Positions 24,608-39,246 of a DNA stretch of 64,000 bases are shown one piece after another. The DNA is from Vitrella brassicaformis CCMP3155. Lineage: Eukaryota; Protista; Chromerida. Under the pieces are notes generated by a model. That model was given only the letters and a program-made list of their open reading frames with translations, searched no databases and was not told the DNA's origin. The first letter of the stretch is position 1; each line of letters opens with the position of its first letter. The position numbers and the translations under genes were made by a program. Where the stretch lies: assembly GCA_001179505.1 (NCBI GenBank), contig CDMY01000337.1, positions 50,158 through 114,157 of the forward strand, given 5' to 3'.

Positions 24608-26976
24608 TCACGAAGTCGGCAGGAGAGGTGCGTCGGCCGCCTCTTCGGCACTACCCTCACTTGACCGACACGCAGCCACCCACAGAGAGACAGACAGACA
24701 GACACATACTCTCACCCAAATGCTCCAGTGTCTGGCCCTCTCGTCCTCACTCTGACCTCCCGGTTGCTGTCCCTCTGCGGCAGCTGCAGCAGCTGCAGCA
24801 GCCTGTTGCTGTGCGGCGCTTCCCTTCCACTCGCCGCCGGTCCACTCGCTGTTCATCATGGCGGTGATCATGGTCTTCTCCTCCTCGTCGAGCTCCTCCT
24901 CCCATATGCTCTCCTGCGTCACCACATTGTAGAAGTAGTCCGCCCCACTCTCGGGGTCGTTGTACTTCTCCCATATCTCGTCAGCCCAGATCGACAGGCC
25001 CTTTTGTGCATTGTAGAGGTAGTCGTTGCCGCTCTCAGCGTCCGTGTACTTGACCCACCCCTCCGGCAGCCCCTTGCTGTCGCGGCCCATGAAGCCCAGA
25101 GAGCTCTGGTCGGCCGGCGGCGGCTCCTCCTGGGCCGGGTTCGGGCGGGCCACCTCCTCTTTGAGCTTCAGCTGCTTGACGGGTACTGGGGGCGGGGCTT
25201 TGCGGGTCCTGGCGTAGACAAGGTAGCCCACCAGGGCGGCAAGCATGAGGGCCGTGAAGCAGCAGATGAAGATGAACACCGACCGCCAGAAGTCGGCCCA
25301 CTCCTCGGTGAGGGCCATCGACTGGCCGGGGGCGTTAATACTGTCAGACACCGACACCACATTGGGCACCATCTCCACCTGAGACACAGAGAGAGAGAGA
25401 GAGAGAGAGAAGGGGCGATTCCAATGTTTGTTTCTGTGCAGTGCATGTGTCCTCCTCACCCACCCAATCGTCGACAAGAATAAAGTTGAGCCATCTCTTG
25501 AGGTTTGCGCGTCTGTAGTTGCAGTCCAGCATGGCGCGGGACCACACCTTGTCGCGCGAGAACCCGCAGAAGGATGTCGACGCGGCCTTCCCGGCGTTAC
25601 ATGGAGACAGGAATCCTTCGAAGCGGTGCCAGGCGGCGCGAGCCAGGGGGAAGAGTTTGTGGCATGTCGCGTTGAGGGCTGGCTCCAGATCGACCACTGT
25701 CGCCTTCTCTCGGTAGCTGTCGCCTGTGCGACTTGCTGCAACCAAAGAGGCAGCCAGAGAGCGGCCAAAACGGTTGCGTGTTGTTCTTCTCATGGTCTGA
25801 CTGACCGACTGAGCAGATAGGTCTGAAGGTCGGTTTGTCGTTCTGAAGTCGTCAAAAGAGCGAGGCGACGGTTGTCCTTGATGAGCTCCCCGACTGTCTT
25901 TGTCGGCTTGATCCACTCGGATGCAGGAACCAGCCTGTCCATCTTGTCACGAAAGTAGTCGACAATGAAGGTCATGAACTCGGTCTCCACGTCCACGTCT
26001 GCAACCAAGTGCGCGGCAATACAGATGCATGCCATCCACTGATGCATGCGACTGCACACCGACCGATGTGCGCGACGTCGCCTGCGCCCTTGGGGTCGAA
26101 TGCGGTGAATACGGTCTTCTTCTGGAAGGCGCGGAAGTCGACGACCACGACATCGTTCTTATATTCGTCCAGGAAGGACTCCACCTGCACGAGGATCTCC
26201 TCGATATCCTGCCCCCTTGCCCATGGCTTCCAGAGCGAGTTGCCACGTAGCTCACCAACACACCGTCTTTGTAACCGACCTTGGTTTATCAAGGCACAAG
26301 CACACATGGTGGGAGGCATACGGGCGGCCCCCTGACCATGACATGGCGGCTGCATTCATGGTTTTGCTGACCTTATGCCTCGTTTGAGCTGTGCCATGAC
26401 GTCGTGTGGCTGGAAGCGGAAGGTGCAGTCCTCGACGGCTTTGCCATTCCAGTCCTTCATGTCCACACCCGCCCCAGAGTTGTGCGTCCCGGGGAAGGTG
26501 ATGTAGCGGATCTTAAACTCACACAGGCTGGTGTAATGGTTGCAGCCCGCCAGCGGCCGGATCTCCTCCGGCTCTGGGGCACTGCAAATCTTCTTGTCTG
26601 CGAAGGCGAACGAGAGGGGGCTTTCATCAGACACCCACATGGAATCGCCGCTGTGCTTCTTGCAGTCGAGTTTGCCGATGTCGGTGCGGCACTTGCGGCC
26701 CGACTGATGGTGGTCGCTCTCCTCGCAGGGCTCAAGGAAGTTGACCCTCGGGCAGCGGCCGCCAACGAAATAACCGAACACGCTGTCGCACCAGTAAGAC
26801 CCGCCCCCTCCTGACGACTGCTGCAGTTGCTCGCCGGCCTCGAGTTGAACGAACGACAGTGCGGGGCGCTTGTCCGATGCATCTTTGCGGTGGCGGTGGG
26901 CGTCAGACACACAGGCGAGGGATAGAAAGAGGGCGAGAGGGAGGGGTGGGGCTCCTCGAAAGGAGAGAAGCCTCAT
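24608..26976 (-). CDS. Type-I membrane protein: signal peptide, Cys-rich segment, PI-PLC X-box-like phosphodiesterase ectodomain, TM helix, two cytoplasmic WW domains
   Basis: ITFPGTHNSG...QLKRGIR...VESFLDEYKNDVVVVDF...LNFILVDD (PLC-like). TM VFIFICCFTALMLAALVGYLVYA. LPEGWVKYTDAESGNDYLYNAQKGLSIW and IWEKYNDPESGADYFYNVVTQESIW (WW x2). Confidence 0.8.
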
Positions 26977-27098: not shown

Positions 27099-30000
27099 AT
27101 GGCTTTGTGCCGTGTTGCACTGTGGAGGGCTCTCCTGCTTTTCTGCTTCCTGTTCTCATCTGCGGCGCTGCCCACATTCAATGCGAGACAGATGCCACAG
27201 CAGCTCACAAGCGACGGTGCCTTTTATCGCAGTGCAGACGATGTAGCCTTCCTTCAAGACCCTGGCGGTAATGGGACAGCGGGCCGTGGCGGAAGCAAGC
27301 CCACTCTCCCTCCACCGCTCCGTATCGACTGTCAAGTCGACAGCCGGGAGGTGGTGAAGCTCGTTGTGCGCCCAGAGGATGGGTTGCTGCCAGATGGCTG
27401 GAAGGACCCGTCGCATGAGAGGCCCTTCTTCACCGGCCAGGGACACCCACCCACAAAGACAAACAGGTGACACAGAGCATGCACAGCACGGCACACAAAC
27501 GCGTTGGATGGCTGATTGTTTCGCTCCTGTCTCTCTGCCAGGGTGACTGCCACATCCGGGCGGGTCCTCTGGCTGGACTTCGGCGCCAACCACTACTTCG
27601 TCACTCCTTTCTTCAACGCCACCCACCACATATGCATCCCCCTCCTCCCCCCTGGCGGACCCGCCGAGGCGTCCTTTCTACTCGCCTTCCATTTCGCTGT
27701 CTCGACCCCACCCCTCGTCGGCACCAGACAGGTGCTGCTGGACAACTTCCAGGGCTTCCAGGTCGGCTTCCTCCCCGACGAAAGCGACCCGGAAGCCGTG
27801 CATTTCGGGGTGCTGCCTCTTGTTGCTGGGGATCGGTCATCGATGGTGCGCATATGCTGGCGGGCGGAGGAGGGGCTGCTGTACCATGCAAGAAGATTGC
27901 AAGAAGATACTGCTTGTGTGTGAGGATGGTTGGTGGGCCCATCTCTCTTCCCTTTGTCAGATTTTGTGTCTCGTTGTGGCGACGGCAAGGTGGAGCCGCC
28001 CGAGGAATGTGACACGGGGGGTGAGGCGCTGGGGTCAAGTGACTGCAGTTGCAACTGCAGAAGTAAGACCCCGTAGGTAACAGATGCCTTGTCTCACCAT
28101 CTGTTACCTATATACCTGCCCTCTTCCCTCAGAGAAGTGTCCGCCATACGCCAGCATTCTTGGCGACCGTGCCCTCCGCTTCGCTGCCCGATACGTGACC
28201 CCACACCAACAGCGCAATGCACAGGCCACGTCGCCCTACGGATTCACGTCCTCCATTCTTGTCAAGGCGATGGAGGCAGGGGGGGCGCTGGAACTGAAGT
28301 GCCGGGAGGATGTCCCATCTGTAGTCGGTGACAAGAGGCGGAATCGCACCTTCACTGCCGACGTGGCCAGCGGCAGGGACATCGTCATATGCGGTGCGAG
28401 TCGGTCGGGGGAATTCTCGCCGCGACTCATGGACTGCTACGGTCGGTGGGCTGGTGAGTGGTCGATCGACTCCTGCGCCTTTCTTGGTGTCCGTCCTCAG
28501 AGACATGTGATCCGGATTCTCTGCTGTGGTGGCAGCAAACAGACATCGTGCTGCCCGAGAGGCAAGCCACCCTCCAACTTGTGTCGCCAAGAAGGGCAGG
28601 CTTGGTGCGGCACGGCGAGGCGGTCCGCGTGAGATGCAACCCATCGGCAGGTGTGGGTGGGGTTGAGGGGGCCCCCAGCGAACAGACACTGGAATGTGAC
28701 GACGGGCACCTAGAGCCACTCAGGCTGCCTTGCTTTGGTAAGTCATTCATGACAGACAGACAGAAGCCATCGATCCGTCACGGAAGGGGCTCTACGGCCT
28801 GTCTTCTTCTTCGTCTGTGTGTGCCACAGCCATTTGTCCAGCCGAGATCCGCGGCCCTCCCACCTACACCCTGCCCATCTCACCTTCGCGTTATTCCATC
28901 AGCGGCGAGGGCTTTCAGGAGGGCGCCACGCGGACCCTGTCGTGCCGGCAGGGCTTCACCACCCCCACAGACAGCACGACAACCACAGAGGAGATCGAGT
29001 GCATCAAGGGCCAGTGGACACCCGTCACTCTCGTCTGCGAGGGGCAGTGCCCGCCATTCGCTCTCCCCAGGGGCAAGGAGCATCTGTATGTGACCGACCC
29101 GCCCCTCACACGTGAGAGTGCGCCGTTTGGTAGCAGGATCCATGTGTATTGCGCGAGGGGTCTGTCTCCGCCGAGTGACGGGCCGCAGAGTCTTGAGGTG
29201 GAGTGCACCTGCTACGGCACCGCTGAGGAGTGCCAGAGCAACAAGGGCACCTACGAATGGACCGACTTCGAGCTGCCCTGCGGCGGTAGGAACCACCGAC
29301 ACACTGATGGATTCACTGCAGGGGTGTGTCTCTTTGTTGGCTACAGCCTCCTGCCCTTCCTACCAGACAGAGGAGGGCTATATCACAGAGCTGCCATTCG
29401 CCCTCGGAGCCGCCTCAGCCAACAACCGCTCGACTGAGACATCGCCGATGGGCCACGTCAGGCAGACCGGTGCCAACGACACGACTGCAGAGGAGGCCTC
29501 CAGCGCCATGTCTGCACTCACCGTGGTAGCAGTATCAGGGGGGAAGGTGGTGGGCGGTGGAGGAGAGGACAGCACGGCAGCTGCTGGTGGGAGAGCAGAG
29601 GCCAGCGATGTGACTGTGCCAGAGGGGACGGCAATCGTGGTGGCCTGTGATGCTGAGAAGGGCTATGGTGTGCGACTTGGGGCTCTGCACACGCGCGACA
29701 CCGTGACGTGCACTAGCCGTGGATACTCTGCCAAGACGCTTCTCTGTTACCGAGCGTATACACATGACATCTCCAGACGCCCTTGCCTTTTCTCAGGTCT
29801 GTGTGCCGCTGTCTGGCTTGCAGACATGTGCTTGTCGTCTCCGCCTCTTCCCGACCATCTGCACTACCTCGTGGACCCCCCTGCGGGCGACACACGCACA
29901 GGTCCCCCCTACCCCCATGGATACGCAGTCACCGTTAGCTGCCGCGCCGGCAGCAGCAGAGGCGAGACTGACGCCGTCCCGCTGCGGGAGACACTCACGT

Positions 30001-33000
30001 GTGTGCAGGGCAGATGGACCGAACCAAACCTTGTCTGCCGAGGTGGGGCGGTGAGAGACATTAGCTATCGCCAGCTGGCCATAAGAGACATCTATATACG
30101 TGAGACATGGCTGGTGTGTGTATATGCAGCCAAGTGCATGGAGTGGTCGATGCTCGATGACGCCGTGTACGAGACGCTTCCTGAGCCGCAAGAGGCCCTC
30201 AAGAGGCGTGCGGATGCCGCGCTCAACAAGACGGCGGGCGAGGGTGGGTGGTACGACGGTGCCATGGTCAAGGTCAAGTGCCGACACTCATTCGAGGAAC
30301 AGGACCTCTACTGCCGAAATGCACACTGGACACCACTCACACTCGTCTGCACACGTAACCCGCAAGACAGCAGCACTTTGACACTAGCCAGCCACTATTG
30401 CTTCTTTCGTTCAGGTCCGTGCCCGAAGCTCTCTGTGGAGGCCCGCAAGGGCATGGAAAGCGAGAAATCTTTCCTTTATGTGGTCTCGCCTGAAGAGGTC
30501 ACTCGGGGGGAGTCGCAGCACGGCACTGTGGTGACGGTGAGGTGCAACCAAGACAAGGGCTTCTCGCCCGCAAGGGGGCCCGTTGAGGACCGCATCACCT
30601 GCAACAAGGGACACTGGACGCCACAAAGGCTCTTCTGCGGACGTGAGAACGAGAGAACGGCTGAACTGACATCTCTGTGTCCATCAATTGATCAATGTGT
30701 GCAGGAGACTGTCCCTTCATCCCGTGGCTGCATCCACCTGAGGCCTACCTCATCCCCCAGATCCGCACTCGGCCCCGCGACACACCGTCGCTGCGCCGCC
30801 CACATATGGCCGAGGGGACGGTGCTTAACGGCCCTGACGTGCTGGCACCCAGTGCATCTCCCTCTCCCCCACCCTCTCCTTCACCGTCGCCAAGCCCCTC
30901 CCCCACGCCGATCGTCACAACGACCCAGCAGCCGGTAAGACAGTATTTCTCTCTCTGTAAGCAGCAGATATCAGGATGCGTGTGTCTCTATCTTAGACAT
31001 CGACGGAAGAGCCCAGCGACTTTGCTGAAAACGAAGGTGTCCCGGCCTTCCTGGAGGAGGGGAAAGATGACACTACGGACTGGTCGCCCGCCACCTATAC
31101 CGCCGCCCACCAGCTGGAGATCCTGATCGGGCTGGAGCATCATCCCTCGGGCACTCAGGTGTTCATCAAATGCAACGGGGACCTGGGGTACTCGCCCAGC
31201 ACTGGGGCGAGGAACAGAGTGGACGCCATCGTATGTGAGGCCGGGAAATGGACACAGCTCCCATTGACATGCATGCGTAAGCTCATGCAGTAAGTAGAGG
31301 GCAACACGTGGGTGAGACAACACACATGCACAGCTGTGGTTGTGTGTGCGTCTGTGTGTCCAGCTTCGTGTGGGCCTTTCCCGTCCCCTGAGCACAGTCA
31401 CTTTTACTCCATTGAGCACATTGGGGGCATGGCCAACACGGATAGGCACGGCGCCAAGGTGCGCATCACTTGCTCGGACAAGTACGCCGCTCTGCCCGAG
31501 CCCCGGTCGCCCGGCTTCGCTGAGAGCGTTTGCTTCAACGGCACATGGCGGCCATTCCCGCCACCAATGCTCTGCTCTGGTACTCACACAGGCCAGAGAA
31601 ACGTACGGATGCACAATACCATTTCTTGTGTGCCCGTCCATCCATCCATCCATCCATCCAATTGATCAGGCAGTTGCGCACCGTATGCCCTCCCGGCCTC
31701 TCAAGTGCTGGCCAGCCCCCCCAAGGCCTTCTACTCGACGTTCGACACGATCGACATTGCCTGCAACACGCAGGCGGGGTACCTCAATGCGAGTGACCGG
31801 TTCACCAAGGTCAGGAACGTGGGAGGGGAGGAGGAGGAGCCGACCAACAAGGGTGAGGGCGCCGTGCTGTCTGTATCAACACTCACGTGTCTCCATGGGC
31901 TCTTCAGTGAGCCGGAGCCGCCGCTCGATTGCCGGCGTAAGCGCATCCACGCACCCACACATGGTCCGGCCCACATTGACGTATCCGCCGCTGCCCTTTT
32001 CCAGAGTCCTGCTCGGATTTCATAACCCTCGTCGACACCACCGAGTACTCATTCCGTGTTATGTCTTCCTCGGCGGAGTTCACCAACACCACTGCATGCG
32101 CCCTACCCCCATCCGCTCCTTCGGCAGTGGCCAACACATCTGCCCACCCTCCCTCGCCCCTCCCCTTGCACCCGAGACATGGCAGCTGCGTCAAGTTGGG
32201 GTGTCAGATGGGCTACACGCCTGATGTTGACCCGCACCAGTGGAGCGACGAGCCGTGTGCGAGTCCGGGTGATGTGCACTACGAGCCGGTCTTCGGCAGT
32301 CGGGACTGCGAGACGCTGCGCTGCATGGATGGGCAATGGAGAAGGCGGTCTTTCAGATGCAGAAGTAGGCAGGCAACAGAGGAGGATGGGCTCCGTTTTC
32401 CCATGTGTGTGTCTCTTGCAGAGGACTGTCCCAACCCTTTCTTGCATTATCTCCCGGAGGGCCTAGATATCCTTAACACGACAAAGATAAAGGACGTCTA
32501 CCATCATGGGGAGACACTCACCATCACGTGCCACGGTGAAGGAAGCGCATACCTCAAGTGTGCTCGCGACGTGAATCCGTACGTCGCACATGTTGATCAG
32601 AGCCGGCGGGGCGTCCGTTGACTGGCTACGCTGCGGTGCCCCCCGAGCTGCCGGACAGCAACCAGACCCTCACGTGCAACGACGGACATTTCGACTTTGT
32701 AAAACTCGACTGCAAAAGTGCGGAATGACATCAGACACGAGAGAGAGAGACAGCATCAACCAGTCTTTTCGCTGCAGAATTGTGTGGTCCATACTTTCCT
32801 CCTGGCCCCAAGGATCACTACAAGCACTACCACTGGTCGACCGATTCAGAAGGGCTCCAGTCATCCGTCGACAGACAAGCGGAAGAACTCATCAAGAAAC
32901 GGGTGAGACAGACAGACAGGTATCGAGGACAAACATATGGAGACACCGCCCGCCCTGTTGCTCTCTCTGTATCTGTAGGGCAACACGACGGTGAGCGCTG

Positions 33001-36000
33001 AGGCTCTGAAGCCTTATCTCGTTCATCGGTCGGTGCGATATATGCGGTGCGCCGACCTCTACTCGGACCCCGACTGGCCGTCGCCGTCGCCATACGAGAC
33101 TGTCGAGTGCGTCAGCGGGCTCTGGACCATCCAGCAACTCAAATGCACAAGTGAGTCCGATCAGTGTCTCAACACCATCGATACACACTCTTGTTTGTCC
33201 GATGTGTCTTCCTTTCAGAGCAGTGTCCCGGCAAGAAGTTCTACTACCTCCCCTCCGACGTGTACCCGACCACATACACAGGCAGAAAGGGCGGCCTCCC
33301 CTCCCCGCGCACACCGCACACCGTGGGCTCCCTCTTCGACCGCTCGTCCCTTTATGACGATGGCGATATTTTGTCGATCGACTGCATCGGTCCGACGAGC
33401 CCGTCTGCGCTGCCGCCTGCGGGGGAGGAGACGACCGTGGGTATGGGGTATGAGGGCGACAAGTGCGACGTACGCTGTACGAGAGGCAAGTGGACCATGC
33501 TGCCCATCATATGCAAAAGTAAGGTGGCGAGGGGGAGAGAAATGACGGGAGGTCACAGTATGTGGTCGTGTCTGCAGGGAGGTGTCATCCTTATGTGAAC
33601 CCTCTGCCGGCTCGGGCAGTCTGTGAGCCGCCGCTGTTTTGCAAAACCGACCCTCGGGATCTGACGTCCGACGAGCAGCTGCACACGATGCACCTGCCCT
33701 ATGGCAACGACACCATGTTCCGCCACGGCTCGGCACTCAACATCTCGTGCATCGCGACCTACCTGCCCTCACTGCTGCCAGTGCAGGAGACCATCACCTG
33801 CTCAGATGGCAGATGGGCCGCCACGCAACTCACTTGTTGGAGTAAGTGCACACAGCTAAGGAGAGCCAGCAACACCCGCACAGAATCTCTCTGTGTCTCC
33901 AGAGCCGTGTGGAGCGTTCGATGCCCTCGCTCGGAGTGGCGAGGACCCCTCACGGTACCTCTCAGAGCCAGACCAGAACAACCTCAACATCACACCGGCA
34001 CACTGGCGAAACGACGTGCCGCAGCCCTCACCCGGCAGCAAGGAGGCGGTGGGGCCGTACTTCCTGCATGGGTCTCGCTACGTGGTGTCTTGCGACACGG
34101 CCAAGGGTTTCGAGTCCATCATGCCGCGGCCAGTGGACTTCAGCGAGTGCTTCGACGGACACTGGACCGGCGTCGCACTGCAGTGCAGACGTACGTGTGT
34201 TACTGGGGTTGGTGGTGTGGGTATACACCTTCCCGCGTGTGTTCATGTGTGTCTTCAGGAAGGTGTGGATCGGTGGAGTCAGTGATGGAGAGCCTTCACG
34301 AGGACCCGTCTCGGTACACAATCGCCCACAAGGGAGTCACCCACGGGACTGTGGCACACCTCACGTGCGCCGAGGGATACACACCCGTGGAGGGCCGGCC
34401 CGACGAGCTGGAGCTCATCGAATGCAATGACGGCCAGTGGGGCCGACCCAACCTCAGATGCGAAAGTAATCCAGTGAGCGAACAGTGATTGGCGACACAC
34501 ATGGCCACATCTCTTTGTGTGTGCAGAGAAGTGTCCGGATTACATGGAGTATGCTGGAGTGTATGACTCGGAGGTGCTCAACTCATCAAGATATGTGCTC
34601 ACGGGCTTCTCGGGCCAGAAATGGGCTGGCGCCGCATTCACCATCGAGTGCGCTGTCGGCGCATCCCCAGTAAGCAAGCGACAAGAGAGAGAGAGAGAGA
34701 GAGAGAGGTCCCTCATTCGTGTCTCGTCTCGGTATGGTTGTGACAATGGACGGCTGCAGGATCAGCCTGTGCAGGAGCTGACATCCGCTGGCGAGGGTCC
34801 CCAGCTGTCGGTCGCCTCTTCTCAAGTCATCCGCTGCCTCAATGGCGGCTGGCAGGCACGACTGCTGTCATGCCTCGGTAAGAAGCAGCGATCGAATCAC
34901 ATCACAACCCTCTAAAAACACTTGGTGCCATGTCTATGTGTCTCACCTGCGGCCAGCCAACTGCCCCGACTATCTGCCGGAGCCCAACTACGAGATCGAT
35001 GAGGAGTGCGGGCAGGGATACATCGTCACCGGACACTCTTTTGGATACGACAACGGTACACAAGGGACAGCACGCAGGCAGGCGGGCAGGCAGGCAAGCA
35101 GCTCAAGTGCCTGTGTGTCTCTCTGTGTCTGTCTGCGTGTCTCTCAGATACCAAGACGGTGCGCAACGGCTTCTCCCGTGAGCTGATGTGTTGCCTGCAG
35201 GGCATGCCCATCTTCGAGGACAGCGACGAGCCGAAATGCTCGTAGGCCACGCCACATCGCCACCTTGACCCCTTGATTGATTATGTGGCTGTGGGGGGTG
35301 TGTCAGGTGGGATTGGTCTGTGAAGGATGCTGGTCCGAATCCCGCCATGACAGCCGACGACCCCACATGGGGGTGGGACAGAGTCGTCTGCCACGACGGA
35401 CAGTGGACACAGCCGCAACTAGAGTGCCACCGTAAGGATGGGTGGATGGTGGGTGGGTGGACAAACAAGATGTGTCTCCACCATCTCTTCCCCTCTGTGT
35501 GTTCATTCATTCATTTGTCTATCAGCCAACTGTGTGGCCCTCGAGGCCGAGAAGTTCAACTTAGATCTTGGCGAGTACAAGCAGTACGGGCGGGCCACCG
35601 GTGGCCGCGAGACCAGCACAAGCTACGACATATTCGAAGAAGCGGTCAGCCTCTTGCAAAAGGGCAGCCAGCCGGCCACCACAGCCAGGAGGCCAACACG
35701 CGTCCCCACCCCCCGGATCCGCCACTCTCTGATCCAGCTGCCGCCCCCACCACGTGAGGGCGGGAGGGGTGACGAAGGCGACATGGCCGATGAGGACGCG
35801 ACAGGGGAGGCGTTCGAGACTTATCCATACGGGACAACGGTGGACGTGCGGTGCGACAAGGGCAGTCTTCCAGACCCGGTGCAGGGTGAGTGGCCGAAAG
35901 AGTGGGACAAGCGCGTGACGGTGGAGGCGACGTGCAAGCGGGGGCGATTCCAGAACATACCTTTCGACTGCATACGTACGTAGACACGCGAGACGGAAGG

Positions 36001-37932
36001 GAGAATCCTATCTTTTGCTTTCACATCATCATACACCCTCTCTCTACCCATGCATGTCTCCCTGTCTTCATCAGCCGTGTGTCCCTTCATCCCCAAGGAG
36101 ACGGACCAGTACGCGCGCTACACGCTCGTCGGCACGCGAAGGACACAGGGCGACGAACGGTACAGAAAGACACACATCTGGATGTCATGTCTCTTTAGCG
36201 GCAAATCTTGGCGCTGCAGCTTTCCGTATGAGTACTTCAGCAAGACTTTCCCGTGGCTGGCTCGGCATGGCAGCATATTCTACACCATGTGCACCACTCC
36301 GAAGTATGAAACGTTTAAGAACGAGACTTTCCGTGAGCATGCGGCCGACAATTGCGAGTGGAACGCGGGCAAGTGCCTCAACCGGATGCTAACCGAAGGC
36401 GAGGACACACGCAATACGCACAGGCATACGCCAGGAAAGCGCGTGGGTGCCCATGTGTCTCTCCCTTCTTGTTTCGTCCCCTGCAGGCAGACATAAATCC
36501 GACATCGGCAAGGATGTTGCCAAGCTCATCAACCCAGTCAGCAGCCCCAACATCAAGTTCTACAAGAAGTTCTGGCCCAACGCATGGGGCGACAAGCTCA
36601 TACCCAACGGACTCGCCAAGGCGCTCGGCGACTACCCACCCTACAAAAAGTACCAGTGCTTCTATGGCACGTGGCTCACCGACTCGCCCCCACTCACATG
36701 TGCCCAGTCCATCAAGGTCATCAGATGTATCGACCAACACGCGACAGTGTGGCGACTCAAGAAAGGAGCAAGGACTCCGCCGTCTGTGAGTGGTCAAGGC
36801 TTCTTATCTCTGTTGCCTCTGCTATGGTGGCTTTTGAAGAAGACGCGCATTCTCGACGTGCACTTGCGGCGCGGTCTCCCTTCAGCACTTATACGTTTTG
36901 CCTCGGCTTGCATGGAACGATGGCCACCATCTCAGGCCAATTCAACTGAATTTGCCGAAGCTGGAAAGAATGCGGACGGTGCTGACTGCGACGGTTTGTT
37001 CTGTGAGGCGGAGGTCATTTTCCTGCGTGACATATCAATCGGTGACACTGTTCTGTCTTGGGACGCGACAAGAAGGCGGCACACATGGAAAGACGTCTAC
37101 TTCAAAGAGACATTTGGTAGGGAAAGGGGTGCACCGGTCGACCATTGTGGGACACCATCGTGTGTGCCATAAGTGTCTATGCCGTATCGATTATCGTTGC
37201 GCAGACCCCCCTGGCCCGTCCGATCTGACCCCCACGGTGACGATCACCGTCCACCGCCCCCGCACATCCCTCACCCTCTCCCCGTCACACCTGCTGCCGG
37301 TGGTCGTGCCATCGACAAGGCACAGGACGAGACTGGTGGCTGCGAGTGAGGTGCGGGTGGGAGACATGGTCTATGTAGGCGGGAAAGGGGGCGACGCGAT
37401 GGGACGCGTTGCCGGCGTCAAGTGGAGGCAAGAAGTGAGCAAGAGATGGACAGACAGACAGACAGACAGACAGACAGAACGAATGAGAGCGTGTGTCTTC
37501 TGATCTGGCTGTCAGCGACGTGTCTTGTCGTTGATGTATGTGATGGGCGGCTACCTCGTGGCCAACGGGATTGTGATATCTGACGCCGACGAGCCCCTCG
37601 ACCTGCCCACGCAGGGCAGATGGACGGCTGTCACTAACCTGGACACAAGGCAAGCCGAGCCGAGCTCCTGCACGCACAGGGAAGACATGGAGGGACACGT
37701 ATTGATGATATCAGGCTTCTGTACCTTGTTGGTGGTGCTGCTGCGGTCGATTCGTGGTGGTACCGTGCATATTGGAGGTGAGCGAGACGACCGCCTCAGG
37801 TTGCACATCTTGTCCACGTCTCCCTGCATTGCATCTGTCAGATGGAGCGTAAGGCTCAACGATGGGCTTCAGGCTTTGTGTGCGAGAGCACAAGAGGCTC
37901 TCTCTGACCTGTGGACGACATTTGTGATGTAG
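27099..37932 (+). CDS. Giant secreted multi-Sushi/CCP-repeat protein with C-terminal Hint (Hedgehog-type Hog) domain
   Basis: Signal peptide MALCRVALWRALLLFCFLFSSAA. Roughly twenty C...C...GxWxxxxLxC modules (e.g. CIKGQWTPVTLVC, CNDGQWGRPNLRC). Hint: CIDQHATVW...ISIGDTVLSW...SLTLSPSHLL...ASEVRVGDMV...GYLVANGIVIS, followed by a Trp-rich tail. Confidence 0.85.
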
Positions 37933-38049: not shown

Positions 38050-39246
38050 ATACATACAAATCACTGCTTGCAATTGTGTCCACTGCAGCCGATCGCTCTC
38101 TTCCGATTGACTCACTCACTCACACTCATTGATTGATTGATTGATTTGATCGGTCAGCGATGTTTGCCTCTCGTCGTTCCCTCGCCGTGTCGGTCTTGTG
38201 CTTCTGGCTGGCCATCCGCTCGGCACCCGCCACCAACACAAGCAGCAGCAGCCTCTTCTATCAGCGTGCCGAGCCAGCTGCCGACGGCAATGAGGGCGAG
38301 GAGGGTGAGGGTGAGGGCGTGCCTGTCCACGTCCACGTTCATGTGTCCGCCCCGCCCGCCGCCGTGCCGTCGGCTGTGGCGCCTGACAGTGTGGCGCACA
38401 TGGCCGAGGCGCTGGCCGCTCAAGACAAGGACGAGGCCGACGCCGAGAAGCGACAGGCCCGCACACTCGAGGCCAAACTGACAATCGACGACAAAAAGGA
38501 CACCATCGACGCCGAAAAGGACGCACTCAGGTCACTCACAAACACACACAGACACATCCATGTCTCCATCTCTCTCTCTCTGTGTCTGTGTGTGTGTTGC
38601 TGTCAGGGCTGAGCGTCGTTTGGTGTCTGCGGCAGCCCGTGTGGCGGACGAGGAGAGCGCCGCTCGAGACGCCATCGAGGGCGAGCACCAGACGCAGGAG
38701 ACGCTCGAGCGCAACGAACAAGAGACAGACAAGAACGTCAAGGCCGCAATCGCACAACTCAAACACGAGGCATCAATGGCACACACATAGGGAGAGGAGG
38801 GAGACACACATATGGATGGATGTGTGTGTCATGTATGTGCAGGAGGGCGAGTTGCGTGTGGCTGACAGTCGTTTGAAGGAGGCCAAGGACAAGGAGAGGG
38901 ACCTCATGCAGGCCGCCCAGCAGCCGACTCCCACCACCACCAGCACACACAAGGCGCCCCACCCAAGCAGCAAGCGGGCCGCAGACGGAGAGAAGGAGGG
39001 CGGGACGGCCGCAGAGCAGGAGGCACTCAAGGCACTCAAGGACACGGAGGTGAGCAGGCGGATTGGTGCATTCAGCTGTGGTCAATGGATGGATAGATGT
39101 GTGTGTGTGTGTCATAAGGTGTCCGAGTCGAGTGATCCGTGTGAAGTGCTGGAGAGCATCAAGCCGCACGCGGCACACCGATTCAGAGCACACGCAACGC
39201 ACTGATGCATCAATCATCACACAGACGCACAGAGACGCACACAGTG
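38050..39246 (+). repeat. Inverted segmental duplicate, copy B (pairs with 19087-20297)
   Basis: Same sequence as copy A in opposite orientation, with scattered substitutions and small indels. Confidence 0.95.
38160..39205 (+). CDS. Secreted acidic coiled-coil protein, paralog B
   Basis: MFASRRSLAVSVLCFWLAIRSA...; near-identical to 19127-20178. The final exon VSESSDPCEVLESIKPHAAHRFRAHATH-stop is the same in both. Confidence 0.7.

What the first reader, a model, noticed from the sequence alone, without database searches (positions are those of the whole stretch)
27099..37932. Giant Sushi-array protein ending in a Hedgehog-type self-cleaving Hint + sterol-recognition-like module
Seen: directly after the last Sushi repeat (GTWLTDSPPLTCAQSIKVIR) comes C-IDQHATVW (Cys at 36726-36728), then LxxIxxGDxV, the block-B His (SLTLSPSH, 37288-37290), ASEVRVGDMV and GYLVANGIVIS. 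Re-splicing the last exons gives a Trp-rich tail (TRLLYLVGGAAAVDSWWYRAYWRW). Known: Hog domains (Hint+SRR) autocleave before Cys1 and attach a sterol or other nucleophile to the N-terminal product; the Hedgehog SRR has a similar RLLY...HWY pattern. Inference: an adhesin of about twenty Sushi repeats may be released and lipid-anchored by autoprocessing at an atypical Arg|Cys bond (Hedgehog uses Gly|Cys). Protist Hog fusions exist, but I do not know this architecture to be characterised.
Basis: partly seen in the sequence, partly recalled or inferred. Interest (0 to 1): 0.85.

Follow-up and report, generated by a model that had tools for sequence, protein, structure and literature searches.

The report
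Giant Sushi-repeat protein with Hedgehog-type self-cleaving end
This coral-associated alga (Vitrella) has an intact gene for a huge secreted protein of about 20-22 Sushi repeats ending in a Hedgehog-type self-cleaving domain; this kind of protein is known in protists, but whether it attaches a lipid, as animal Hedgehog does, is untested.

Summary
Window 27099-37932 (+) is a 37-exon gene of Vitrella brassicaformis CCMP3155. Its annotated product is CEM03304.1 / A0A0G4EXI5, 2734 aa. It has a signal peptide, an unassigned N-terminal domain, 20 clear plus 2 marginal Sushi-like modules, an 8-residue linker and a Hint domain starting at Cys2433 (36726-36728).

Pfam Hint (PF01079) scores 32.5 bits against a cut-off of 29.7. 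A low-confidence AlphaFold model matches only Hint folds, and Foldseek ranks Hedgehog HhC (1AT0) first. Cys2433 aligns with the catalytic Cys.

The domain is atypical:
- Glu replaces D46 and Ser replaces T69.
- Asp replaces C143, and C143D abolishes Sonic Hedgehog processing.
- Arg, not Gly, precedes the Cys.
- About 70-80 extra, poorly conserved residues separate strand 1 from the IGD motif.

The tail is conserved, aromatic and amphipathic, and is predicted at low confidence as two helices. It does not match the sterol-recognition part of the Pfam model. The 'HWY'-like motif is absent in both paralogues.

I read this as probable self-cleavage, with the acceptor (water, sterol or other) unknown. 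The scan met this family before at other loci of this genome, where the copies are frameshifted; this copy and CEM24571.1 are intact. It is a new member of the known protist Hog proteins.

The parts
27099..37932 (+). Whole gene: 37 exons, 36 introns of 45-99 nt, product 2734 aa (CEM03304.1 / A0A0G4EXI5); stop at 37930-37932
   Evidence: The public protein P0001 maps exactly onto the window. Splice sites are, identity, and the annotated locus.
27099..27179 (+). Signal peptide (residues 1-27); the only strongly hydrophobic segment of the protein
   Evidence: Hydropathy scan.
27180..27915 (+). N-terminal domain (about residues 28-247), conserved with paralogue P0003; fold not assigned
   Evidence: 31% identity to P0003. 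No Pfam hit. The AlphaFold model failed, with mean pLDDT 29.
27961..28062 (+). Cys-rich acidic repeat exon (residues 248-281, starting CGDGKVEPPEECD)
   Evidence: Weak matches only: DUF4215 at E 0.31 and TIGR02232 at E 0.085.
28133..35975 (+). Array of about 21 Sushi/CCP-like modules (residues 282-2264), mostly one module per exon or exon group
   Evidence: Pfam Sushi E 6e-19. The self-profile gives 21-22 stretches against 0-3 in shuffles. Exon and phase table.
36075..36701 (+). Last, atypical Sushi-like module (residues 2265-2424). It starts 'VCPFIP', ends 'YQCFYGTWLTDSPPLTC', and has a long unassigned middle part
   Evidence: marginal E 0.04-0.4. No Pfam or NCBIfam hit.
36702..36725 (+). Linker AQSIKVIR; Arg2432 is the predicted -1 residue
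36726..36785 (+). Hint strand 1 with the predicted nucleophile Cys2433 (36726-36728)
   Evidence: The structural alignment places this Cys on residue 1 of inteins and on C258 of Hedgehog 1AT0. It is invariant in the three paralogues.
36786..36989 (+). Insert of 68 codons between strand 1 and the conserved 'F..E.V....GD' strand. It is annotated as coding, is poorly conserved, and was modelled as low-confidence helices
   Evidence: Only the annotated frame is open, here and at the same place in both paralogues. Codon statistics fall between those of exons and introns. No strong hidden splice sites were found. pLDDT is below 50.
36990..37590 (+). Hint core (exon 33 end, exon 34, exon 35 start; introns 37117-37204 and 37435-37515). 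Key residues: IGD (Asp at 37044-37046), Glu2560 (37107-37109, D46 position), Ser2588/His2591 (37279-37290, TxxH block), Asp2662 (37582-37584, C143 position)
   Evidence: Pfam PF01079 at 32.5 bits against a cut-off of 29.7. Foldseek top hits are 1AT0 and 6TYY. Residue positions. Register taken against the fly HhC sequence printed in PMC12054796.
37591..37929 (+). C-terminal tail (residues 2665-2734; introns 37650-37714 and 37778-37841) with the family motif NLDTR..Y...GAA.V.....R.YWRW. Predicted as two helices at low confidence, the second strongly amphipathic
   Evidence: Conservation. Same exon structure in the paralogues. Helices. Hydrophobic moment 0.51-0.59, in the top 1% of windows, and aromatic content 16-22%.

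Best explanation
The gene encodes a secreted precursor of about 300 kDa. It has a signal peptide, an unassigned N-terminal domain and about 20-22 Sushi/CCP modules that probably act as an adhesive or binding surface array. A Hog-type Hint domain and a short conserved aromatic tail follow at the C-terminus. Shown here: the architecture, the intact reading frame across the Sushi-Hint junction, the Hint fold, and conservation of Cys1, the SxxH block, an acidic residue at the D46 position and the tail in all three paralogues. Inferred: in the secretory pathway Cys2433 attacks the Arg2432 carbonyl (an N-to-S acyl shift). The resulting thioester is resolved by a nucleophile. This releases the 2432-residue Sushi array from the roughly 33 kDa Hint-tail fragment. 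The amphipathic Trp/Arg-rich tail probably holds the domain at a membrane surface or recruits the acceptor. The hydrophobic stretch of the insert, which is clearly hydrophobic only in the two paralogues, might help. Which acceptor is used (water, a sterol or another hydroxyl compound) is not decided by the data. Because the C143 position is Asp, the reaction cannot use the second-cysteine branched intermediate described for animal Hedgehog. If it runs, it must resolve the Cys1 thioester directly.
For: The gene model maps exactly onto the window, and the last Sushi module, the linker and Cys1 lie in one exon. The protein is co-linear with paralogue P0003 across the GC-AG intron just upstream. 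Pfam Hint PF01079 scores 32.5 bits, above its 29.7 cut-off, and no other Hint-type or intein family matches. In Foldseek all 32 hits with E<1e-3 are Hint folds, and Hedgehog HhC 1AT0/6TYY rank first (E 3e-6, 21-22% identity). In the second-look alignment model residue 9, which is Cys2433, pairs with intein residue 1 and with C258 of 1AT0 (Z 8.0, 133 residues aligned). Cys1, Glu2560, Ser2588, His2591 and Asp2662 are invariant in the three paralogues. The tail core is the best-conserved long segment (51% identity, against 36% for both the Hint core and the Sushi array). It is amphipathic and aromatic. There is no transmembrane segment apart from the signal peptide, so the released array has no other anchor. 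Non-metazoan Hog domains commonly carry Ser, Thr or Asp instead of the motif-J Cys (PMC2362128).
Against: C143A and C143D abolish Sonic Hedgehog autoprocessing (PMC12054796), and this family has Asp at that position. The Pfam score is marginal: 28.6 bits on the full protein, and no hit at all for the two paralogues. PDB sequence searches find nothing. The AlphaFold model has low confidence (mean pLDDT 55, Hint core about 59-79). About 70-80 extra residues of uncertain status sit inside the domain. A bulky Arg precedes the scissile bond. I found no transcript, proteomic or biochemical evidence. The N-terminal query of the representative search and the three word-index searches found no relatives outside Vitrella.
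Confidence: 0.6

Rival explanations
1. Full Hedgehog-like lipidation. The thioester is resolved by the 3-OH of a sterol (or a similar lipid alcohol) bound by the tail, leaving the Sushi array ester-linked to a membrane lipid at Arg2432.
For: An invariant acidic residue (Glu2560) sits in ungapped register with the general base D46, which activates cholesterol in Hedgehog. A conserved tail follows the Hint domain, predicted as helix-turn-helix in the position of the SRR, with an R-L-L and an aromatic cluster. The released array has no other anchor. Sterol biosynthesis was lost at the transition to the apicomplexan ancestor, which implies that chromerids keep it (PMC4501334).
Against: The tail does not match the SRR part of PF01079. 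Of the H-P-R motif needed for human SHH cholesterolysis in cells, only Arg is kept, and the HWY-like triplet is not conserved in the paralogues. C143 is missing. Cholesterol ligation is described as unique to metazoan Hedgehog (PMC7242414 abstract). In my searches of the held library, no paper turned up showing that a non-metazoan Hog transfers a sterol.
Confidence: 0.2
2. Degenerate, catalytically dead Hint domain kept as a structural or binding module, or a family on its way to loss.
For: Asp sits at the C143 position, and C143D kills SHH processing. There is a large insert, a non-Gly -1 residue and a marginal Pfam score. At least one paralogous locus has a frameshift that uncouples the Hog part from the Sushi array (earlier notes s1-239427 and s1-221635).
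Against: Cys1, SxxH-His, the acidic D46-position residue and the tail are invariant across paralogues that are only 36-38% identical overall. That pattern is what purifying selection on an active site would produce. Asp, Ser or Thr at the motif-J Cys position is common in non-metazoan Hog domains.
Confidence: 0.15
3. Transfer to a non-lipid acceptor. The thioester is attacked by a hydroxyl or amine of a cell-wall polymer or another protein, covalently fixing the Sushi array to the thick Vitrella wall. This would be analogous to protein conjugation by BIL/BUBL Hint domains.
For: The Hint fold also matches the Tetrahymena BUBL BIL2 domains (6TMM, 6Y75). The tail is unlike the SRR, so the acceptor may differ.
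Against: There is no specific evidence. Pfam assigns the domain to the Hedgehog-type family, not to BIL families. There is no ubiquitin-like cargo.
Confidence: 0.05

Closest known systems
Non-metazoan Hog proteins (Buerglin 2008, PMC2362128), reported from Cryptosporidium, dinoflagellates, Tetrahymena, red algae, mosses, haptophytes and Glomus GIN1
   Same: They have a signal peptide, a lineage-specific secreted N-terminal region and a C-terminal Hedgehog-type Hint domain. The motif-J Cys is often replaced by Ser, Thr or Asp, as it is here (Asp2662). The SRR motifs K and L are often not conserved.
   Different: The cargo here is a 2432-residue array of about 20-22 Sushi modules. The Hint domain carries about 70-80 extra residues after strand 1. 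The -1 residue is Arg or Thr. The tail has its own family motif (NLDTR...YWRW). I could not retrieve protist Hog sequences for a direct comparison.
Animal Hedgehog C-terminal autoprocessing domain (HhC; PDB 1AT0, 6TYY)
   Same: It is the best Foldseek match. Cys1, an SxxH/TxxH block and an acidic residue at position 46 are shared. Local motifs are close, for example ISIGDTVLS against LSIGDRVLS. A C-terminal helical extension follows the Hint fold in both.
   Different: There is no Hedge domain. The cleavage site is Arg|Cys, not Gly|Cys. Glu stands for D46, Ser for T69 and Asp for C143. The loop between the two tail helices is much shorter. The SRR motifs are not kept. There is an insert after strand 1.
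HINT-domain extracellular proteins of chromerids, Cryptosporidium and Gregarina (Woo et al. [quoted passage not shown]
   Same: Same organism group, and the same idea of a HINT domain in secreted, adhesin-like proteins. That paper also notes an expansion of Sushi proteins in chromerids.
   Different: The HINT row of that supplementary file, as far as I saw it, lists only Chromera genes as examples. I found no description of the Sushi-array plus Hog architecture or of this Vitrella family.
Vitrella paralogues CEM24571.1 (2679 aa) and CEM10019.1 (400 aa, Hog only)
   Same: Same architecture, the same exon structure in the Hog part, the same catalytic residues and the same tail motif.
   Different: They are 36-38% identical. 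The -1 residue is Thr. The inserts differ in length, so Cys1 to the IGD-type motif spans 77 and 120 residues. At the CEM10019.1 locus a frameshift separates the Hog part from the upstream 2435-aa gene. This window's copy is intact.

Membership tests
Hint (Hedgehog/intein) fold superfamily | Hint beta-fold | tested here: met
   In Foldseek all 32 hits with E<1e-3 are Hint folds. VIA-align gives Z 8-10.5 over 114-145 aligned residues. The model has low to moderate confidence.
Hint (Hedgehog/intein) fold superfamily | Nucleophile (Cys/Ser) as first residue of the domain | tested here: met
   Cys2433 aligns to intein residue 1 and to 1AT0 C258. It is invariant in the paralogues.
Hint (Hedgehog/intein) fold superfamily | Block B TxxH | tested here: met
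   The block reads S-P-S-H (Ser2588, His2591) in 'LTLSPSHLL', against 'LTVTPAHLV' in fly HhC. It is invariant in the paralogues. Ser replaces Thr.
Hog domain (Hedgehog-type Hint plus SRR/ARR) | Match to Pfam PF01079 above the gathering score | tested here: met
   32.5 bits against 29.7 on residues 2330-2734, but 28.6 bits on the whole protein. The paralogues do not match. This is a marginal pass.
Hog domain (Hedgehog-type Hint plus SRR/ARR) | Motif J (..G.I.VN.V.AS-C) at the end of the Hint fold | tested here: met
   'GGYLVANGIVISD' is in ungapped register with 'EGTIVVNSVAASC'. The Cys is replaced by Asp, as reported for red-algal and moss Hogs.
Hog domain (Hedgehog-type Hint plus SRR/ARR) | SRR motifs K and L (H-P-R helix; HWY helix) | tested here: not met
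   The Pfam alignment stops at model position 145 of 213, and tail-only scans are empty. Only R-L is kept from H-P-R. 'WWY' is present here only, and the paralogues read 'VFR'. Buerglin reports the same lack of motif K for several protist Hogs.
Hog domain (Hedgehog-type Hint plus SRR/ARR) | C-terminal position behind a secreted cargo with a signal peptide | tested here: met
Hedgehog autoprocessing active site (C1, D46, T69, H72, C143) | General base Asp46 | tested here: inconclusive
   Glu2560 lies 21 residues after the IGD Asp, exactly as D46 does in fly HhC. It is invariant in the family. In the review I read, D303E is mentioned only for DTT-mediated cleavage.
Hedgehog autoprocessing active site (C1, D46, T69, H72, C143) | Cys143 (branched-intermediate thioester) | tested here: not met
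   Asp2662 is invariant in the family. C143D abolishes SHH processing.
Hedgehog autoprocessing active site (C1, D46, T69, H72, C143) | Gly at position -1 | tested here: not met
   Arg2432 here and Thr in both paralogues. Hedgehog uses Gly.
Hedgehog proteins proper | N-terminal Hedge signalling domain | tested here: not met
   Pfam finds only Sushi and Hint.
Inteins / bacterial intein-like domains | C-terminal His-Asn followed by a Cys/Ser/Thr of a C-extein; match to intein models | tested here: not met
   The domain ends '...IVISDADEP', with no HN. No intein, BIL or Vint family appears in Pfam, and no intein model in NCBIfam.
Sushi / CCP / SCR repeats | Module of about 60-100 aa with four Cys and a Trp before the last Cys; match to PF00084 | tested here: met
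   PF00084 at E 6e-19, with about five stretches individually recognisable. The self-profile gives 20 clear and 2 marginal modules, against 0-3 in shuffles. The C..G.W......C signature is seen throughout.
Functional self-cleavage or lipid transfer | Demonstrated cleavage at Arg2432|Cys2433 and the nature of the adduct | not testable with these tools
   This needs biochemistry or proteomics.

The most novel reading that the evidence does not exclude
A non-animal Hog domain that lacks the second catalytic cysteine nevertheless esterifies a sterol or other membrane lipid onto Arg2432. This would anchor a giant 20-22-module Sushi adhesin to the algal surface, with the family-specific aromatic tail (and perhaps the hydrophobic insert) acting as the lipid-recruiting element. 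Protein sterylation would then predate animals and would not need the C143 branched intermediate.
Probability: 0.15. Interest if true: 0.8.

Novelty: new member of a known kind. Interest (0 to 1): 0.45.

Why it matters
Hog domains are widespread in protists. In my searches of the held library I found no paper showing what a non-animal Hog domain attaches to its cargo, and one paper calls cholesterol ligation unique to animal Hedgehog (PMC7242414). The gene in this window is an intact copy of a small Vitrella family in which a very large adhesin-like Sushi array is the cargo. At least one other locus is broken by a frameshift. That makes this copy a concrete construct for testing three things. 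First, whether a Hog domain with Asp in place of C143 and a non-Gly -1 residue still cleaves. Second, what it transfers. Third, whether self-processing is how a chromerid, a free-living relative of apicomplexan parasites, releases or anchors surface proteins. If the domain only hydrolyses or is inactive, this is simply one more domain-shuffled protist Hog protein.

Tried and rejected
1. Hidden intron. I first took 36786-37007 for an unannotated intron (GTGAGT donor, in frame). I dropped this for four reasons. Its GAG acceptor and 222-nt length are unlike all 36 real introns, which are 45-99 nt with C/TAG acceptors. It would remove 'F..E.V' residues that are conserved in the paralogues. The annotated frame is the only open frame there in all three paralogues. 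No candidate splice pair reaches typical scores. A partial intron cannot be excluded, because 36786-36935 has intron-like codon statistics.
2. Word-index protein searches. The Hog region, alignment A1 and alignment A3 found nothing beyond CEM10019.1. This method misses distant relatives and proteins of other lengths.
3. The one exhaustive representative search used the last-Sushi plus Hint N-terminal part. It found only three Vitrella proteins. The Hint core and tail were therefore never searched without a length limit.
4. PDB sequence and profile searches gave no Hint hit.
5. Pfam scans of the tail alone, of the Cys1 segment alone and of the paralogues' Hog regions gave nothing relevant. NCBIfam gave nothing.
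7. A search for cDNA-like contigs with the exon 33/34 junction in metagenome contigs gave no match, so I have no transcript evidence.
8. I did not run a computed pairwise alignment with fly HhC, because that would have meant pasting a long sequence. The registers were read by eye from the sequence printed in PMC12054796, using short ungapped motifs.


Full report
WHAT THE REGION IS

The window is intron-rich eukaryotic DNA of about 59% G+C. A search of 1.84 billion representative proteins, using the exon that holds the last Sushi module and the start of the Hint domain, returned three proteins. All three are from Vitrella brassicaformis CCMP3155.
- P0001 = CEM03304.1 / A0A0G4EXI5, 2734 aa, named 'Sushi domain-containing protein'.
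- P0003 = CEM24571.1, 2679 aa.
- P0002 = CEM10019.1, 400 aa, named 'Hint domain-containing protein'.

P0001 maps exactly onto window 27099-37929 as 37 exons. All 36 introns are 45-99 nt long with CAG or TAG acceptors. Thirty-four have GT donors and two have AAG|GC donors. The public record carries the same gene, with precomputed Pfam marks for Sushi and Hint.

ARCHITECTURE

Residues 1-27 are a signal peptide. It is the only strongly hydrophobic segment of the protein.

Residues 28-247 form a domain conserved with P0003 at 31% identity. I could not assign it a fold. Pfam finds nothing and the AlphaFold model was useless at pLDDT 29.

Residues 248-281 are a Cys-rich acidic repeat with only weak family matches.

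The Sushi-like modules span residues 282-2424.
- Pfam Sushi scores E 6e-19 on the whole protein, but only about five stretches are individually recognisable.
- A profile built from nine of the protein's own modules finds 21 stretches, and 22 after one iteration.
- Twenty are clear and two are marginal: the first (282-384) and the last (the end of 2265-2424).
- Shuffled sequences give 0-3.
- The modules sit one per exon or exon group, and 26 of the 36 introns are phase 1.

The last module ends '...GTWLTDSPPLTC' at residue 2424. An 8-residue linker (AQSIKVIR) follows, and then Cys2433. All of these lie in exon 33 (36487-37116).

THE HINT DOMAIN

Pfam PF01079, the Hedgehog-type Hint module, matches residues 2530-2647. 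It scores 32.5 bits (E 8e-8) on the C-terminal 405 residues, above the 29.7 gathering score, and 28.6 bits on the whole protein. No intein, BIL or Vint family matches in Pfam, and no intein model in NCBIfam.

I made an AlphaFold model of residues 2425-2734 from an alignment of three sequences. Its mean pLDDT is 55. The Hint core reaches about 59-79, and the insert and most of the tail are low.

With Foldseek, every PDB match with E<1e-3 is a Hint fold. The Hedgehog autoprocessing domain 1AT0 and its mutant 6TYY rank first (E 3e-6 and 8.5e-6, 21-22% identity).

In the second-look structural alignment, model residue 9 is Cys2433. It pairs with residue 1 of many inteins and with C258 of 1AT0 (Z 8.0, 133 residues aligned, rmsd 7.3). 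Several inteins score Z 8-10.5, so the fold alone does not separate Hog from intein.

The Hog assignment rests on four points:
- Pfam assigns the domain to the Hedgehog-type family.
- The domain is C-terminal, behind a secreted cargo.
- There is no His-Asn and no C-extein nucleophile.
- Motif J is present.

ACTIVE-SITE REGISTER

I compared short ungapped motifs by eye with the fly HhC sequence printed in PMC12054796.
- 'ISIGDTVLS' lines up with 'LSIGDRVLS'.
- Glu2560 lies 21 residues after the IGD Asp, exactly as D46 does.
- 'LTLSPSHLL' lines up with 'LTVTPAHLV', so Ser2588 stands for T69 and His2591 for H72.
- 'GGYLVANGIVISD' lines up with 'EGTIVVNSVAASC', so Asp2662 stands for C143.

All of these residues, and Cys1, are invariant in the three paralogues, which are otherwise 36-38% identical.

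Two departures matter for the mechanism. First, C143 was recently shown to carry a branched thioester intermediate, and C143A and C143D abolish Sonic Hedgehog processing in cells (PMC12054796). Buerglin (PMC2362128), however, reports that non-metazoan Hog domains often have Ser, Thr or Asp at this position. Second, the -1 residue is Arg here and Thr in the paralogues, not the Gly of Hedgehog.

THE INSERT

Cys1 and the IGD motif are 105 residues apart here. The distance is 77 and 120 residues in the paralogues and 23 in fly HhC.

I first suspected an unannotated intron at 36786-37007. The evidence is mostly against it:
- The segment is unlike the gene's real introns in length and acceptor.
- It would delete residues conserved in the paralogues.
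- At this place the annotated frame is the only open frame in all three loci.
- No candidate splice pair scores like a real one.

Against that, the first 150 nt have intron-like codon statistics (LLR -0.15 per codon; exon windows average +0.22 and introns -0.28). The segment is the least conserved part of the protein, at 25% identity with many gaps. AlphaFold models it as low-confidence helices.

In P0002 and P0003 the insert holds a clearly hydrophobic stretch of 16-22 residues. In P0001 the matching stretch (GFLSLLPLLWWLL) is weaker. RNA data are needed. I found none.

THE TAIL AND THE 'STEROL-RECOGNITION-LIKE' CLAIM

Residues 2665-2734 follow the Hint fold.
- The family keeps the motif NLDTR..Y...GAA.V.....R.YWRW.V...D..Q, with the same three small exons at all three loci.
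- The tail core is 51% identical between P0001 and P0003, against 36% for both the Hint core and the Sushi array.
- The model shows two helices at low confidence.
- The second helix has a hydrophobic moment of 0.51-0.59, in the top 1% of windows of the protein.
- The first 45 residues from the NLDTR motif are 16-22% aromatic, against 7-9% overall.

The tail therefore resembles the SRR in position, in predicted helix-turn-helix form and in a likely affinity for a membrane surface (PMC7906309).

Homology is not shown:
- The PF01079 alignment stops at model position 145 of 213.
- Scans of the tail alone return no Hint hit.
- Of the H-P-R motif of SRR helix 1, only Arg (followed by Leu or Ile) remains.
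- No SRR structure exists to compare folds with.

FAMILY CONTEXT

The scan met this family before, at other loci of the same genome (notes s1-239427 and s1-221635). There the Hog part is uncoupled by a frameshift.

I fetched the locus of P0002. The frame does shift between the '...CLQRRRTIETGIGKK' part and the '...VVKIWRIFRIGPPSSV' part. In P0003 these two parts lie in one exon.

In this window the junction is intact. The protein is also co-linear with P0003 across the GC-AG intron at 36399-36486. P0001 and P0003 are therefore the intact fusions that I saw.

I found no relatives outside Vitrella. These searches were limited in query choice, length window and sensitivity, so this is not evidence of absence.

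WHAT THE LITERATURE SAYS

Hog domains behind diverse secreted N-terminal regions are known from many protists. They include the alveolates Cryptosporidium, dinoflagellates and Tetrahymena (PMC2362128).

The chromerid genome paper notes HINT domains shared with Cryptosporidium and Gregarina, and an expansion of Sushi proteins. The HINT row of its supplementary table, as far as I saw it, lists only Chromera genes (PMC4501334).

I found no paper describing a Sushi-array-Hog protein, or showing what any non-animal Hog transfers.

MECHANISM AND VERDICT

I think the most likely reading (about 0.6) is self-cleavage at Arg2432|Cys2433. It would run through a Cys1 thioester that is resolved directly, without a second-cysteine intermediate, and would free the Sushi array from the Hint-tail fragment.

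Sterol or other lipid esterification is possible (about 0.15-0.2) but unsupported beyond analogy. A dead domain (about 0.15) and transfer to wall or protein acceptors (about 0.05) remain open.

This is a new member of the known class of protist Hog proteins. It has an unusually large cargo and an atypical Hint domain. Its main value is as an intact test case.

Noticed in passing
window 28133-36486 (module-boundary introns): 26 of the 36 introns are phase 1. Every intron that precedes a module-opening 'xCP...' exon is phase 1, so most Sushi modules are symmetrical 1-1 exons or exon groups. From memory, this is also the arrangement of CCP modules in animal genes; I did not check that here. It suggests the array grew by exon duplication.
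   Followed up: partly
window 36399-36486 and 37650-37714: There are two GC-AG introns, both with AAG|GC(A/G)AG donors. The first lies directly upstream of the exon that joins the last Sushi module to the Hint domain. The fusion therefore depends on this intron being real. Co-linearity with the paralogue supports it.
   Followed up: partly
L001:9600-10150 (CDMY01000399.1, locus of CEM10019.1): At this paralogous locus the reading frame shifts inside the segment that is a single exon in CEM24571.1. The annotation there shows a 2435-aa gene followed by a separate 400-aa Hog-only gene. This agrees with the earlier scan notes.
   Followed up: partly
window 30848-30934 (residues about 1021-1049): A Ser/Pro-rich low-complexity linker (PSASPSPPPSPSPSPSPSPTP...) is inserted inside one Sushi-like module, between its opening 'DCPFIP' exon and its closing exon. 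It may be a mucin-like O-glycosylation stalk.
   Followed up: no
window 27180-27915 (residues 28-247): The N-terminal domain is conserved with CEM24571.1 at 31% identity. It has no family match, and no usable structure prediction could be made from two sequences.
   Followed up: partly
window 36075-36701 (residues 2265-2424): The module just before the cleavage site opens and closes like a Sushi repeat but has about 100 extra residues in the middle with no family match. Pfam and NCBIfam show nothing here.
   Followed up: partly
window 37455-37480, 31600-31660, 34690-34720: Short microsatellites lie inside introns ((CAGA)n, (CATC)n-like, (GA)n). They translate to runs such as 'DRQTDRQTDRQTE', 'HPSIHPSIHPS' and 'ERERERER'. 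They are ordinary for this genome but can mislead frame reading.
   Followed up: no
window 24608-26976 (- strand) and 38160-39205 (+ strand): The neighbouring genes are a 596-aa protein with weak WW-domain hits upstream on the other strand and a 275-aa protein without family hits downstream. Neither shows an evident functional link to the Sushi-Hog gene.
   Followed up: no
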